Assembly: GCF_006345805.1 (NCBI RefSeq)
Contig: NW_021826808.1
Span: 1 to 11,929, forward strand
Length of the DNA stretch: 11,929 bases
Direction: 5' to 3'
Source of the DNA: Octopus sinensis
Lineage: Eukaryota
Below, one piece after another: positions 1-7,746 of this stretch. Position numbers and translations under genes: made by a program. A model generated the notes under the pieces. It saw nothing but the letters and a program-made list of their open reading frames with translations, was not told where the DNA came from and made no database searches. Position 1 is the first letter of the stretch. Each line of letters starts with the position of its first letter.

Positions 1-505
1 GCACGAGCACAAGTTTGGAACAGGAAAATTTTCTTCATGAATTCGAAAAGGTGCTTCCACTGCTCGTCTCTCTGCGGTCGAAATGCACACACCTGTCTTC
101 AAAGTGGGAGTAGACAAATCGACACAAGTGAAATTAAAGTCACCCATTATTAAGACATTATTAACTTGGCACTATTCAATTAAAGATTTAATATTCATGA
201 AGCATTGTTTGAAACAGTAGTGACGTTTGAGGTCGCCTGTAGAAGCCAATTATCGTTGAATCGTTAGTTTTGTTATATACAGACACTGATCCACTGTAAC
301 TATTGGAAAATGAGACATTTGCATTTGCGCTAATGAGTCCAGCAGGAAAATAGCAATCTATCCCTTTCTTCTGCCAGTGCTGTCTGTGTGAATTCCTCGC
401 CTTTACTTCAGCTTTCAAGTGAATTGTCTTATGGTGAGTTTCAGTAAGAACGAGGAAAAGAATATAAAGTTTGTTGGTTACCAAGTCTTGAATGAACAGC
501 TTTGA
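1..505 (-). mobile_element. Decayed non-LTR retrotransposon (CR1/L2-group) ORF2 APE-type endonuclease fragment, running off the left edge
   Basis: Minus-strand translation gives APE endonuclease motifs in the correct order: VLTETH (TET at 445-437), IIGFYRRP (~250-229), then after a frameshift and an in-frame TAG (174-172) VLIMGDFNF (GDFN at 144-133), followed by CVDLSTPTLK...IHEENF. Clade assignment is from motif resemblance only. Confidence 0.75.
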
Positions 506-1949: not shown

Positions 1950-2894
1950 ACCTCTGTCTCCTTCCTCGACATTTCGGTCAGCATTCATCACTCCACTCTT
2001 ACCATCTCCATTCACTACAAACACACAGACTCACACTCATACCTAAACTTCTCTTCCTCTCACCCCAAATACACCAAGCTTTCCATCCCCTATTCCCAAT
2101 TCCTCCGTCTACGTAGGCTCTGTAGTGACGACCATGACTTTGAGACTCAATCTCAACGCATGGATCGCCACTTCATCCTACGTGGATACCCCCTCACCAC
2201 TACCCACACCGCCCTTGCCAAAGCACGTTCCGTAGACCGTGCATCTGCTTTCTCCCCCCGAACCCGCTCTGTAGTCTCCCGCCTCCCTTTTCCCCTCACT
2301 TACCACTCCACCACCCTACCTCTCCAACGCACCATTCTTCTAGCTTTCCGGCATCTCCAGTCCGACCCGTCCACTTCACACCCCTTCCCTAACCGACCCC
2401 TCCCCTCCTTCAAACGAGCCCATAACCTACGAGACCTCTTGGTCCACAGCTTCTTCTCTGACCCTACCTCCCAACCTGGCTCGTTCCCCTGCTCCCGCCC
2501 ACGTTGCCGCACTTGCCCTTACCTCTCCAACACCACCCTCCTCACCGGCACCCATCATCGATCCTATCGCATCACCGACTTCTTCACCTGCACCTCCAGC
2601 AATAACATCTATTGCATCTCTTGCTCTCTCTGCCATTTCCTGTACATCGGACAAACGAGACGCCGCTTGGCTGACCGGTTCGCGGAACACCTCCGTGACA
2701 TCCGCCTCGCCAATGACACTCCAGTCACACGCCATTTCCGCTCCACCGGTAACTCCTTGCAACACCTGTCTGTGTTCGGATTGTCCTTGCACAGAGGCCA
2801 TCCGGATTCCCGTTTGCGCCGTGAACAGGGATTAATCTTATCTCTTCGCTCTTTTACGCCATTTGGGCTCCACTCTCCCCACCTTTTCATCTAA
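1950..2894 (+). pseudogene. 5'-truncated PLE polyprotein: RT motif 7/thumb, Cys linker and GIY-YIG endonuclease (314 open codons)
   Basis: SVSFLDISV, YKHTDSHSYLNFSSSHP, SIPYSQFLRLRRLCS, LRGYP; linker CSRPRCRTC; IYCISCSLC..LYIGQTRRRLADRFAEH..RHF (GIY-YIG with CCHH); TAA at 2892-2894. The catalytic RT YxDD region is absent. The N-terminal 107 codons of listed ORF 1629..2894 are read-through of (AT)n and the inverted repeat. Confidence 0.9.
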
Positions 2895-3575: not shown

Positions 3576-3624
3576 TATATATATAATATATATATATTAT
3601 ATATATATATATATATTATATATA

Positions 3625-3665
<41 letters not shown>

Positions 3666-3667
3666 AA
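3576..3667. repeat. (AT)n microsatellite between PLE1 and PLE2
   Basis: Seen directly. Confidence 0.95.
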
Positions 3668-3914
3668 TACCCGGAGCGTTGCATCGGAATATGAAGTGCT
3701 GGATGTGTTGTTGTCGTTCTTGTCGTTGGCATAGTGGAAATACATTCCTCATTACTCTAACTAAGTCTGCCACCAGGATGTTGAGCTTGGTAGTACTCGA
3801 CATCGCTGAGTCATTACGGATTACCAGTGGATTAGCCATAGGTTTACAATAGTGTGAGTGGAGTATACAGGGTTTAACAGTTCCGTTAATCATAGTATTT
3901 TCCATCCACAGCTC

Positions 3915-4027
3915 AGTTCTGTTCGAATTATTAAACTTAAGGAGGTACCTAAAAGTCCTGATCAAATTCCAAAAGTGAAGTGTAGTGTACCAATATTTTT
4001 ATGAATTGTTGAGAATATTCATCGCAT
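3915..4027 (-). pseudogene. cox1: Mitochondrial cox1 5' end (NUMT)
   Basis: ATG at 4027; table 5 translation [38 protein letters not shown], versus the usual cephalopod [34 protein letters not shown]. Confidence 0.95.
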
Positions 4028-4540
4028 ATAATAAGATGGGGATAAAAATAATTGTCCCTAATATATTAAAACATATAATTGATTTTATATTTGTTATTAT
4101 TTTATTTGTTTTAAATATAAAAAATGATTTGATTATTAGTAACATTATTAAATTTAGGTAGAAATATAATCTAACAAGAGTTCTAATAAATAGTAATAAA
4201 GATAATAAAATTATATTTATATTTAAAAGTGAGTTGAGAACTATTAGTTTTGATAGAAATCCTAATGTAGGGGGAATACCTGCAAGGGATAAAATTAATA
4301 TTATGGTGAAGATATTTTCTTTATTTATATCTATATTTTGTTCTGTTAATCAGTATGTAAAAAAGGTTGATTTTATAGAAAATGTAATAAATATAGGAAG
4401 AATTATAATTGTATAAATTAGTAGATAATTAAATATGAGAAAATTATTGATAAAACAGATTGGTAATATTCATCCTAAGTGTGAAATTGATGAATATACT
4501 ATATAATTAATTGTAAGCTAGATTGGTTAATAGCTTGAAT
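4028..4540 (-). pseudogene. nad2: Mitochondrial nad2 3' part (NUMT)
   Basis: Table 5 translation: IQAINQSSLQLIM/VYSSISHLGWML...LSLAGIPPTLGFLSKL...SLYFYL...IPILL. One extra TA (4501-4500) shifts the frame; 157 open codons run 4499-4029; an incomplete stop T at 4028 abuts the cox1 ATG. Confidence 0.92.
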
Positions 4541-5169
4541 TATCTAGGACAGGTAATCTATAACTGGGGTGTTTAGAGGGGAAGTCCACGGTAACTTTTA
4601 TACTGCTATGAATAGAGTATACACACAATATGACAGAATCAGAGTGTACAAAGACATTCAAGAAAATCCTGCACACAACTGGCCCTAAGATGAAGGTTGT
4701 AGAAAAGACAGGTAGGACTATCAAATCTGTATTATGTAGATCATATCCATTGATAATTCACATGTCAAAATAATTGTGCAGTATGTTCTACACCACCCAT
4801 GTGAACTGCAAAACCAAGAGCACTGTATACCAATTAAGTGCCAAGAAGGAGCTTGCGCGACTAACCCGAGTCATACATAGGTGAGACTTCTAGGAGTATC
4901 AATGATAGGGTCAAAGAACACCTGGACAACTACATTGAAAGAAACCAAACTCCATCTTCTATCAGCATGCTGTAGACTGCCACAAGGGCTCCTTAGGGAG
5001 ACTTAAGTTAAACATCTTATCCACACATCCCACTGATGCAATGCTGAGACAGGTCACGGAAGCTGTCTGTATACAAGAATACAAACCCACTCTCAACCAA
5101 AAATCCGGATGGGGTAACATCCAGATTCCACTCGGGAGTACCATTCTATAACCACCCCCTCTCTCTCAT

Positions 5170-5830
5170 TTACATATAATAATCCATTCATACATGTTGA
5201 AATGCATGGTACTAAAATACATATATGCAGTTATATATAACCGTACGAGTGTACATTGTTTCATACGTATGTACGTATGTGTAGATGTATAAGTGTGTGT
5301 ACGTGTGTGTATGTGTTGTATCTTGTGTATGTTAGTGTATAAGTATGTACATGCATGCATATATGAGTATGTGTAAATATATATATGTATTATATATATA
5401 TGCATGTAAACAAAATTAAAAAATAAGAATAAATAGAATAAAATAAAGCAAGTTTGTATTTTAACCGTTGTCCTTGAAAAGAGTGTCATATATATGTATA
5501 TGTATGTATATGTATGTGTGTATGTATGTATAAATATATATATATAGATATGTATTTATGTGTGTGTATATGTATATGTATGTAGAGATGGATGAGCGTA
5601 TATGTGTGTATACTTTAAGATTATACGTATATTTGTTTGTATGTGTGTCTATATGATTGTGTGTACTTGTATATATGTATAAGTAAGGTTATATGTGCAT
5701 ATATGTATCTAAGACGTTGTATCCATTCACCGTTAGACGGCGGTGAGAGGGACAAACGCACATACACACATATATGTGTGTGTATGTGTGTCTATATAAA
5801 TGTATATGTGTGTATATATACAACCTTCAA
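5170..5830. repeat. Degenerate TA/TG/TATG simple-repeat region with short unique spacers
   Basis: Seen directly. Confidence 0.75.
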
Positions 5831-5859: not shown

Positions 5860-7203
5860 TTGACACATATCATTACACAAACATACGTTCACATGTACAT
5901 ACACATGTACACACACACAGACACGTCTACACACTCTCCTAAATACTCACATACATACGTAGGTACAAGTACATACCTGCGTATAGGCATGCACACATGC
6001 ATTCGCACTTACATGTACACATACATACATACATACATACAAACATACAAACATACATACATGCGTAGAGGCATGCACACATGCATGCGCTCATACATAA
6101 ATACATACATATATACGCACATACATATATGCATACATACATACGTACATACATACATACATACATACATACACATACATACATACACAAACACACGCAT
6201 ACATACATACATACATACATACATAAATGCATACATACATACATACACACATACATACATACATAAATACATACATACACACATACATACATACATACAC
6301 ATACATACATACACAAACACACGCATACATACATACATACATAAATACATACATACATACATACATACACACATACATACATACATACATACGCACACAC
6401 ATACATAAATACATACATATATACATACATACATACATACATACATACATACATACATACATACATACATACATACATACACACACATACATACACACAT
6501 ACATACATACATACATACATACATACACACACACATACATAAATACATACATATATACATACATACATACATACATACATACATACACACATACACACAT
6601 ACATACATACATACACACATACATACATACATACACGCATACATACATACATAAATACATACATACATACATACATACACACACACATACATACATACAT
6701 ACATACACACACACATACATACGTACATACATACATACATACATACATACATACATACATACATGCATACACACACACATACATACGCACATACATACAT
6801 ACATACAAACATACATACATACAGACATACATACATACATACATACACACATACACACATACATACATACATACAGACATACAGACATACATACATACAT
6901 ACATACATACACACATACACACATACATACATACACACATACATACATACATACAGACATACAGACATACATACATACATACATACATACACACATACAC
7001 ACATACATACATACACACATACACACATACATACATACATACACACATACATACATACATACAGACATACAGACATACATACGTACATACATACATACAT
7101 ACACACACACATACATACATATATACATACATACGTACATACATACATTCATACAAACATACATACATACATACATACATACATACATACATACATACAT
7201 ACA

Positions 7204-7235
<32 letters not shown>

Positions 7236-7268
7236 CATACACACACACACACATACGTACATATATAT
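5860..7268. repeat. ~1.4-kb (TACA)n/(CATA)n tetranucleotide array, most regular from ~6020 to 7260
   Basis: Seen directly; source of the MYVC/HTYI ORFs. Confidence 0.97.
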
Positions 7269-7573
7269 ATCATGAACTAACTGTTACTTTCTCAGATGCA
7301 GCACGAAGTTTTGTCAGTGAAGAGGTCGCGGTCTGAAAGCGAGGAAAATATTTTGACAAATTAAACTTAAATGTTGAAGTGAATCGAACGGTTTTTGTGT
7401 GTTTCTTAAATGGCTTATAAACACCTTCCACGCCGCAATTGTTCTATATATATATAGCCGCACACATTCAACTACCCTATTATAAACTGAACTTATCTAT
7501 AGATACACCACCACCACATCCACCACTACTACCAACCCTACTCCAAAACTAAGTAACTGTTATGCACAGAATA

Positions 7574-7740
7574 GGCGCAGGAGTGGCTGTGTCGTAAGTA
7601 GCTTGTCTACCAACCACATGGTTCCGGGTTCAGTCCCACTGCGTGGCACCTTGGGCAAGTGTCTTCTACTATAGCCTCGGGCCGACCAAGCCTTGTGAGT
7701 GGATTTTGTAGACGGAAGCTGAAAAGAAGCCCGTCGTATT
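7574..7740 (+). mobile_element. tRNA-derived SINE, 5' half (octopus-type)
   Basis: A-box-like TGGCTGTGTCG (7584-7594), B-box-like GGTTCAGTCCC (7627-7637), then ACCTTGGGCAAGT as in CORE/Meta-type SINE central domains, running into (AT)n. Matches my recollection of an abundant Octopus SINE (not verified). Confidence 0.85.
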
Positions 7741-7746
7741 ATGTAT

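What the first reader, a model, noticed from the sequence alone, without database searches (positions are those of the whole stretch)
3915..4540. Mitochondrial nad2-cox1 fragment inserted cleanly into a retroelement RT gene
Removing 3915-4540 rejoins ...CTA GAT A (ending 4541) to CT GAG CTG TGG, restoring RLPVLD-TELWME in frame. No target sequence appears lost, there is no real TSD, and junction microhomology is 1-3 nt (A on one side, ACT on the other). This is an unusually clear double-strand-break capture with a reconstructable empty site, and it fixes the order PLE2 first, NUMT second. The NUMT lies in the same orientation as the inverted RT segment, so capture during PLE2 integration is a less likely alternative worth testing.
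Basis: seen in the sequence. Interest (0 to 1): 0.7.

Follow-up and report, generated by a model that had tools for sequence, protein, structure and literature searches.

The report
Mitochondrial DNA scrap in dead retroelement
A 627-base piece of octopus mitochondrial DNA (end of nad2, start of cox1) sits cleanly inside an already dead, inverted fragment of a Penelope-like retroelement; it is a tidy example of the well-known patching of chromosome breaks with mitochondrial DNA, not a new phenomenon.

Summary
Window 3915-4541 (minus strand) is one colinear copy of Octopus vulgaris mtDNA: the last 541 nt of nad2 and the first 113 nt of cox1. It is 95.1% identical, with 29 substitutions and a 2-bp frameshift. 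Nine substitutions are non-synonymous. All six that change nad2 are peculiar to this copy, so it is a decayed nuclear copy (NUMT), not live mtDNA. Its flanks are adjacent parts of one retroelement ORF (...RLPVLD | TELWME...). 41 of 50 homologues found with one flank alone place the two flanks at consecutive residues. Three related DNA copies read straight through (NNN-ACT-GRR-xTG-TGG). The empty site was therefore GAT-ACT-GAG: nothing lost, no target duplication, 3 ambiguous bases. The frame-restoring removal is 3917-4540 (624 nt), not 3915-4540. The host is a 5'-truncated fragment with a C-terminal GIY-YIG domain, next to (TA)49. Its first 331 nt are inverted and end exactly where the direct part begins, as in twin priming. 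The NUMT lies 77 nt from that inversion junction, which favours a later, separate break repaired by end joining. Read support and an orthologous empty allele could not be tested. The mechanism is ordinary and interest is low.

The parts
3576..3669 (.). (TA)49 microsatellite abutting the outer end of the inverted retroelement arm; likely target of the retroelement insertion
   Evidence: Tandem Repeats Finder, period 2, 49 copies. The related copy L004 also ends in (TA)n. PLE bias for microsatellites, and for (TA)n in the Hydra clade, is reported in PMC8557442.
3668..3914 (-). Distal part of the inverted PLE2 arm: ORF piece (T)ELWMEN...HIQHFIFRCNAPG, equal to residues 78-160 of homologue P0093 and positions 858-1111 of L004
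   Evidence: tblastn of P0093 at E=1.6e-22. 97 homologues at E<=1e-3. 77-79% nt identity to L003-L006.
3915..4541 (-). NUMT: one colinear mtDNA fragment. nad2 3' end (window 4541-3999, with a 2-bp insertion near 4503-4504) and cox1 5' end (window 4027-3915); the two genes overlap by 29 nt, as in the mitogenome. Bases 4541 and 3917-3915 are shared with the target.
   Evidence: blastn 95.06% over 627 columns to O. vulgaris mtDNA. Alignment. 20 synonymous and 9 non-synonymous substitutions. All 6 substitutions that change nad2 are derived in the NUMT against 20+ octopod nad2 sequences.
4542..4618 (-). Proximal part of the inverted PLE2 arm: ORF piece SIHSSIKVTVDFPSKHPSYRLPVLD, equal to residues 53-77 of P0093 and positions 781-857 of L004
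   Evidence: tblastn of P0093. blastn to L003/L004 at 73% over 78 nt. Alignment.
4619..4619 (.). Inversion junction: a single base between the inverted arm (ends 4618) and the direct arm (starts 4620)
   Evidence: Placement against L004: window 4618 = L004 781 and window 4620 = L004 1110.
4620..5118 (+). Direct PLE2 arm, coding remnant: YTQYDRIRVYK..., then the linker and GIY-YIG endonuclease pieces. It has frameshifts and stops, and lacks about 190 nt relative to L004 and L006.
   Evidence: tblastn of P0093 residues 161-171 and 230-391. Weak Pfam GIY-YIG hit at E=0.024 on the window piece, and a hit above cut-off on homologue P0093. blastn to L004 and L006.
5119..5298 (+). Direct PLE2 arm, 3' untranslated tail, running into TG/TA-rich simple sequence
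   Evidence: blastn: window 5190-5298 matches L004 1769-1879 at 73%. Sequence.

Best explanation
A 5'-truncated copy of a retroelement with a C-terminal GIY-YIG endonuclease (Penelope-like; 'PLE2') inserted next to or into a (TA)n microsatellite in an Octopus vulgaris-group genome. At integration its first 331 nt were laid down inverted, in a twin-priming-like way. The inverted arm covers element positions 781-1111 and the direct arm starts at 1110. Later, a chromosomal double-strand break arose inside the inverted arm, between or within the codons GAT|ACT. It was sealed by non-homologous end joining that captured a 624-627-nt fragment of mitochondrial DNA spanning the nad2/cox1 boundary. The join used 0-3 nt of microhomology, lost no target base and made no target duplication. 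The captured piece has since decayed as neutral nuclear DNA. Shown: identity and limits of the mt fragment, contiguity of the flanks, the empty-site sequence inferred from paralogues, the inverted/direct architecture, and the pseudogene decay. Inferred: the break-and-capture mechanism, the order of events and twin priming.
For: The mt origin and its limits are set. The insert is one colinear fragment whose ends lie inside nad2 and cox1, with no poly(A), so it is not a processed mt mRNA retrocopy. Flank contiguity at protein level: P0093 residues 77|78 and 41 of 50 independent homologues with gap 0. At DNA level L004 reads GTT-ACT-GAA, L005 CAT-ACT-GGG and L006 GCA-ACT-GAG, all ungapped. There is no TSD and no loss, with 3 ambiguous nt. 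That is the usual NUMT pattern; 54% of primate NUMT insertions have no deletion (PMC2567098). The NUMT is decayed: a 2-bp frameshift and 9 non-synonymous changes. The 6 that change nad2 are NUMT-specific against 20+ octopods, and 4 change the cox1 N-terminal residues (one base, mt 3996, lies in the nad2/cox1 overlap and counts in both). The NUMT lies 77 nt from the inversion junction (4541 versus 4619) and 246 nt from the outer end, so it is not at any element junction.
Against: No reads, no second assembly and no orthologous locus could be examined. Twenty exact ORF look-ups and two junction scans found nothing. The empty site is inferred from paralogues only 73-79% identical, not from an empty allele. 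The NUMT and the arm share orientation, which RNA-level capture requires but which end joining produces half the time. The relative ages of the arm and the NUMT could not be measured because no close family consensus was available.
Confidence: 0.86

Rival explanations
1. Passenger NUMT. The mt fragment was captured earlier in a parent PLE2 copy, and the interrupted RNA was then retrotransposed in trans to this locus. The NUMT would then predate this insertion.
For: Nothing positive. It is merely not excluded, because genome-wide copies could not be counted. The junction-spanning query found only three hits, all about 50% identical.
Against: It needs trans-mobilisation of a copy whose ORF is broken by 624 nt with in-frame stops. 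None of the four related copies retrieved carries the insert. No ORF like the junction ORF exists in the protein collection.
Confidence: 0.05
2. Capture during integration. While the second (inverted) cDNA was being made, the reverse transcriptase jumped from the PLE RNA to a mitochondrial nad2-cox1 precursor RNA at ACT, then jumped back at A. This would be an RNA-mediated NUMT of the same age as the element.
For: The NUMT sense strand matches the sense strand of the inverted arm, and there are short matches at both switch points. nad2 and cox1 are adjacent on one strand with no tRNA between them, so a precursor RNA spanning the boundary is conceivable.
Against: The enzyme would have to return to exactly the next template base, since 0 nt are lost or duplicated. 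It would also need a mitochondrial precursor RNA at a nuclear integration complex. Same orientation is expected by chance in half of end-joining captures. Fillers captured at integration would be expected at the inversion junction or the element ends, not 77 nt inside an arm.
Confidence: 0.04
3. Assembly artefact: a chimeric join of mitochondrial reads into a nuclear contig.
For: Read support could not be tested here. PLE tandem and inverted structures are known to trouble assemblies (PMC8557442).
Against: The insert differs from the mitogenome by 29 substitutions and a frameshift, including 9 non-synonymous changes at otherwise conserved residues, so it is not live mtDNA. Both flanks resume the same ORF at the very next codon. 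A misjoin would not produce that.
Confidence: 0.03

Closest known systems
NUMT insertion by non-homologous end joining at chromosomal double-strand breaks (yeast and primate studies; Hazkani-Covo & Covo 2008, PMC2567098; review PMC2820518)
   Same: A single colinear mtDNA fragment with ends at arbitrary positions inside genes, no poly(A), no target-site duplication, 0-3 nt microhomology, no loss of target bases, and later neutral decay.
   Different: The host is a cephalopod, and the empty site is inferred from paralogous retroelement copies rather than from an orthologous locus. Nothing differs mechanistically.
Penelope-like elements with a C-terminal GIY-YIG endonuclease (Penelope/Poseidon, Neptune, Nematis and Hydra clades; Craig et al. 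2021, PMC8557442)
   Same: [quoted passage not shown] Also 5' truncation, an inverted 5' piece and insertion next to (TA)n.
   Different: No hammerhead ribozyme was found, Pfam gives no RT hit and the clade was not determined. The usual PLE inverted partner is a second 5'-truncated copy that keeps its own 3' end. Here the inverted piece is only the 331 nt immediately upstream of the direct part.
Twin priming of LINE-1 (5' inversion; Ostertag & Kazazian 2001, cited from my own knowledge)
   Same: The inverted 5' segment and the direct 3' segment are contiguous in element coordinates (781-1111 versus 1110 onwards). The 5'-most end of the inverted piece is joined to the 5' end of the direct piece, with 1 nt of filler and 0-2 nt of overlap.
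   Different: The element is GIY-YIG-encoding and Penelope-like, not an APE-type LINE. Flanking TSDs cannot be read because both ends lie in simple repeats. I found no paper describing twin priming for PLEs.

Membership tests
NUMT (nuclear copy of mitochondrial DNA) | Significant colinear nucleotide identity to the mitogenome of the host lineage | tested here: met
   95.06% over 627 columns, 989 bits, to O. vulgaris mtDNA. The nad2 piece is 97% identical in protein to O. vulgaris and 87% to O. mimus.
NUMT (nuclear copy of mitochondrial DNA) | Embedded in nuclear sequence on both sides | tested here: met
   Both flanks are consecutive parts of a nuclear retroelement ORF. This rests on this assembly only.
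NUMT (nuclear copy of mitochondrial DNA) | Not live mtDNA: decay or loss of coding capacity | tested here: met
   A 2-bp frameshift and 9 non-synonymous changes. The 6 that change nad2 are derived in the NUMT against 20+ octopod sequences.
NUMT (nuclear copy of mitochondrial DNA) | Junctions supported by independent reads or a second assembly | not testable with these tools
   Twenty exact ORF look-ups and two junction scans returned nothing.
End-joining (NHEJ) capture of filler DNA | No target-site duplication, no or little target loss, 0 to a few nt of microhomology | tested here: met
   The empty site GAT-ACT-GAG is inferred from three paralogues. 0 nt are lost, there is no TSD, and 3 nt are ambiguous.
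End-joining (NHEJ) capture of filler DNA | No hallmarks of reverse transcription (poly(A), ends at transcript ends) | tested here: met
   The ends lie inside nad2 and at cox1 nt 113, with no A-tract.
End-joining (NHEJ) capture of filler DNA | Orthologous or allelic empty site exists | not testable with these tools
   No octopus genome assembly can be searched at DNA level here.
Penelope-like element, C-terminal EN+ type | C-terminal GIY-YIG endonuclease | tested here: met
   Pfam PF01541 scores 24.4 bits (cut-off 22.6) on homologue P0093. The window's own decayed piece scores 15.4 bits, below the cut-off. tblastn shows the window is colinear with P0093 to residue 391.
Penelope-like element, C-terminal EN+ type | CX2-5CxxC zinc-finger linker upstream of GIY-YIG | tested here: met
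   Read directly in relatives: P0093 'CDNEKCHLC' and P0099 'CDPTSCIVC'. It is broken by frameshifts in the window.
Penelope-like element, C-terminal EN+ type | PLE-type (TERT-related) reverse transcriptase | tested here: inconclusive
   Relatives carry YVDD upstream of the thumb. Pfam and PDB sequence searches of the 1047-aa relative P0123 gave no RT hit. No PLE reference set was available.
Penelope-like element, C-terminal EN+ type | Hammerhead ribozyme in the pseudo-LTR | tested here: not met
   No hammerhead hit in the window or in L002-L006 at permissive thresholds. All these copies are 5'-truncated or short contigs, so a pseudo-LTR may simply be absent.
Penelope-like element, C-terminal EN+ type | 5' truncation, inverted or tandem arrangement, microsatellite target | tested here: met
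   An inverted arm plus a direct arm, abutting (TA)49. L004 also ends in (TA)n.
Twin-priming-type 5' inversion | Inverted and direct segments contiguous in element coordinates, joined 5'-end to 5'-end | tested here: met
   L004 781-1111 is inverted and 1110 onwards is direct. P0093 residues 53-160 are inverted and 161 onwards direct.
Twin-priming-type 5' inversion | Target-site duplication flanking the whole unit | tested here: inconclusive
   Both ends lie in TA/TG simple sequence.

The most novel reading that the evidence does not exclude
The mitochondrial piece was copied from a nad2-cox1 precursor RNA by the retroelement's own reverse transcriptase. This would have happened through two template switches during twin-primed integration, making it an RNA-mediated NUMT created by a Penelope-like element. 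Same-strand orientation and short matches at both switch points allow this. The exact return to the next template base and the position inside the arm argue against it.
Probability: 0.04. Interest if true: 0.6.

Novelty: new member of a known kind. Interest (0 to 1): 0.18.

Why it matters
The locus adds one clean, base-resolved NUMT insertion in a cephalopod genome. Its pre-insertion site can be reconstructed because the target is a repeated element. It fits the established picture that mtDNA fragments seal chromosomal breaks with little or no loss of target sequence. Practically, the copy covers the first 113 nt of cox1 at about 95% identity, so it is a minor caution for read mapping in the Octopus vulgaris species complex. 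It ends well short of most of the usual barcode region. The side observation may interest transposon specialists more: a GIY-YIG-type element whose 5' inversion looks like LINE-1 twin priming. It is a single locus.

Tried and rejected
1. Exact look-ups of 20 window ORFs, including those spanning both junctions, were run to find the same locus in other assemblies. None is in the collection.
2. A homology search with the junction-spanning ORF found only three relatives about 50% identical and no near-identical copy.
3. An X-padded search with the distal flank for full-length relatives gave one hit, P0093.
4. Scans of metagenome contigs for the filled right junction and for the empty site gave 0 hits each.
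5. Rfam searches for hammerhead ribozymes in the window and five related contigs gave only sub-threshold miRNA hits caused by TG/TA simple repeats.
6. Pfam and PDB searches of the 1047-aa relative P0123 for an RT domain gave nothing.
7. Literature searches for octopus NUMTs, for twin priming in PLEs and for the SRA runs behind the Logan contigs gave nothing usable.
8. I rejected the plus-strand ORF 4557-4685 as real coding upstream of 4620. The minus-strand reading SIHSSIKVTVDFPS... matches homologues there; the plus-strand reading does not.
9. I rejected an in-place DNA inversion as the origin of the inverted arm. One breakpoint would have to coincide with the 5' truncation point. This is inference, not proof.

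Full report
**What is there**

The window is SSR-rich eukaryotic nuclear DNA carrying several retroelement remnants. Positions 3915-4541 have 18-23% G+C. Read on the minus strand with the invertebrate mitochondrial code, they give the C-terminal 172 residues of nad2 followed by the N-terminus of cox1, MRWMFST...IRTEL. The nad2 piece hits Pfam PF00361 at E=1.2e-12. It is 97% identical to Octopus vulgaris nad2, 87% to O. mimus, and less to other octopods.

I fetched 7 kb of the O. vulgaris mitogenome (L001, GCA_951406725.2 OY720585.1). There nad3, nad2, cox1 and cox2 follow each other on one strand, and nad2 abuts cox1. blastn gives one HSP: window 3915-4541 against mt 4086-3462, 95.06% over 627 columns, with 29 mismatches and one 2-bp gap. 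No other part of the window matches those 7 kb beyond simple repeats. The rest of the mitogenome was not checked.

**Junctions**

The base-level alignment and the flank print-outs give these minus-strand readings:
- Nuclear: ...CCT GTC CTA GAT | A ATTCAAGC...(mt)...CGAACAGA ACT | GAG CTG TGG ATG G...
- Mitogenome: ...GGTAG AATTCAAGC... and ...CGAACAGAACT AGGAC...

Mt homology therefore runs from A(4541) to T(3915). The net insert is 624 nt. Removing 3917-4540 (or 3918-4541) restores ...LPVLD TELWME.... There are three ambiguous bases (A, or ACT, or A+CT). I estimate this much or more arises by chance in about 6-11% of random joins.

**Are the flanks truly contiguous?**

I searched the pieces apart. 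A padded search with the distal flank alone found P0093, a 440-aa protein from an ENA metagenome contig. tblastn of P0093 on the window maps its parts as follows:

| P0093 residues | Window coordinates | Strand |
|---|---|---|
| 53-77 (...PVLD) | 4616-4542 | − |
| 78-160 (TEQW...FSG) | 3917-3669 | − |
| 161-171 | 4620-4652 | + |
| 230-391 | 4624-5118 | + |

An exhaustive HMMER search with the distal flank (window 3669-3914) found 97 representatives. I then aligned the proximal flank, which took no part in selecting them. In 41 of the 50 that cover both pieces, the end of ...LPVLD and the start of TE.W... are consecutive residues. The other nine have indels further into the distal piece or deletions of their own.

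At DNA level, Logan contigs carrying related copies (73-79% identical) are all uninterrupted at this point:
- L003/L004: GTC GTA GTT ACT GAA ATG TGG
- L005: GTC CTG CAT ACT GGG CTG TGG
- L006: GCA GCA ACT GAG CTG TGG

The pre-insertion site was therefore GAT-ACT-GAG, with one ACT. No base was lost, none was added, and there is no target-site duplication.

**The insert is a decayed nuclear copy**

Of the 29 substitutions, 20 are synonymous and 9 non-synonymous. All 6 that change nad2 are unique to the window copy, while more than 20 octopod species share the O. vulgaris state. Four change the cox1 N-terminal residues (one base lies in the nad2/cox1 overlap and changes both genes). A 2-bp insertion also shifts the nad2 frame.

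The excess of synonymous changes suggests that about half the divergence arose on the living mitochondrial lineage. The other half, roughly 2%, would be decay in the nucleus; this split is inference. The pattern excludes a chimera with present-day mtDNA. The ends lie inside nad2 and at cox1 nt 113, with no A-tract, so the insert is not a processed mitochondrial transcript.

**What the host element is**

[quoted passage not shown] Pfam PF01541 is above its cut-off on P0093. That is the architecture of EN+ Penelope-like elements (PMC8557442). No hammerhead ribozyme was found, and no profile-level RT assignment was obtained. The clade is left open.

The window copy is dead and rearranged. In L004 coordinates, window 4618→3668 is positions 781-1111 inverted, and window 4620→5298 is position 1110 onwards, direct. 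One base (4619) lies between them, with a 0-2-nt overlap. The outer end of the inverted arm abuts (TA)49, and L004 also ends in (TA)n.

The inverted piece ends exactly where the direct piece begins, and the two are joined 5'-end to 5'-end. That is the signature of twin priming as described for LINE-1 (my own knowledge). It differs from the usual PLE head-to-head pair of 5'-truncated copies that each keep their own 3' end (PMC8557442). The direct arm also lacks about 190 nt and carries frameshifts.

**Mechanism and order**

The NUMT lies 77 nt from the inversion junction and 246 nt from the outer end, between two consecutive codons. The simplest account is a later double-strand break in the dead arm, sealed by end joining with a stray mtDNA fragment. 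Clean, deletion-free joins are the commonest outcome for NUMTs: 54% of primate NUMT insertions show no deletion (PMC2567098).

Three rivals remain, none of them testable here:
- Template switching to mitochondrial RNA during integration. The shared orientation allows it. The exact return to the next base and the position inside the arm argue against it.
- A passenger NUMT inherited from a parent copy. None of the four relatives has the insert, but genome-wide counting was impossible.
- Misassembly. This is contradicted by the decay pattern and by the codon-exact flanks.

I could not find the same locus, an empty allele or any reads.

**Verdict**

Both the observation and the interpretation are supported, with two corrections. 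The coordinates are off by 2 nt, and the target was the thumb-region remnant of an already truncated and inverted fragment, not a working RT gene. This is a new instance of a well-understood process, so interest is low. The twin-priming-like architecture of a GIY-YIG element is the more unusual detail, but it rests on one locus.

Noticed in passing
window 3668-5298: The host retroelement has a twin-priming-like 5' inversion. The inverted arm (element positions 781-1111 of L004; P0093 residues 53-160) ends exactly where the direct arm (1110 onwards; residue 161 onwards) begins. There is 1 nt between the arms and (TA)49 at the outer end. I found no paper describing twin priming for Penelope-like elements.
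   Followed up: partly
window 4652-4690: The direct arm lacks about 190 nt (roughly 60 codons) that are present in L004 (1144-1338), L006 and P0093 (residues 172-240). It also has several frameshifts and stops between 4757 and 4940.
   Followed up: partly
window 1950-2891 (+): A second, unrelated Penelope-like remnant with an open 300+-codon frame: thumb-like FLD...YKHTD motif, CSRPRCRTC linker and GIY-YIG (IYCISCSLCHFLYIGQT; Pfam E=0.0028). Its 5' end runs into TA-rich simple sequence at 1650-1950. It matches PLE2 relatives only weakly, in the endonuclease.
   Followed up: partly
window 1-171 (-): ORF scrap ...NNVLIMGDFNFTCVDL..., with a weak Pfam Exo_endo_phos hit (E=0.15). It looks like the AP-endonuclease part of a LINE cut by the window edge.
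   Followed up: no
window 7565-7745 (+): A stretch resembling a tRNA-derived SINE (...GGTTCCGGGTTCAGTCCCACTGCGTGGCACCTTGGGCAAGTGTCTTCTACTATAGCC...), followed by (TA)n. From memory it resembles the abundant octopus SINE. ARAGORN calls no tRNA.
   Followed up: no
window 5860-7330, 8400-10000, 10400-11270: Kilobase-scale imperfect arrays of CA/TA-type simple repeats with extreme strand skew (GC skew up to ±0.95). They generate long spurious ORFs (MYVCMYVC..., HTHTYIHT...) and dozens of sub-threshold Rfam miRNA hits (mir-297, mir-466 and others), all artefacts of the repeats.
   Followed up: partly
L003/L004 (Logan SRR11869390, SRR11869384), L005/L006 (SRR11869385): Related PLE2-family copies occur in three sequencing runs of unknown organism. 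L003 and L004 are the same copy assembled from two runs. L005 carries its own deletion and a small inverted repeat just upstream of the junction region.
   Followed up: no
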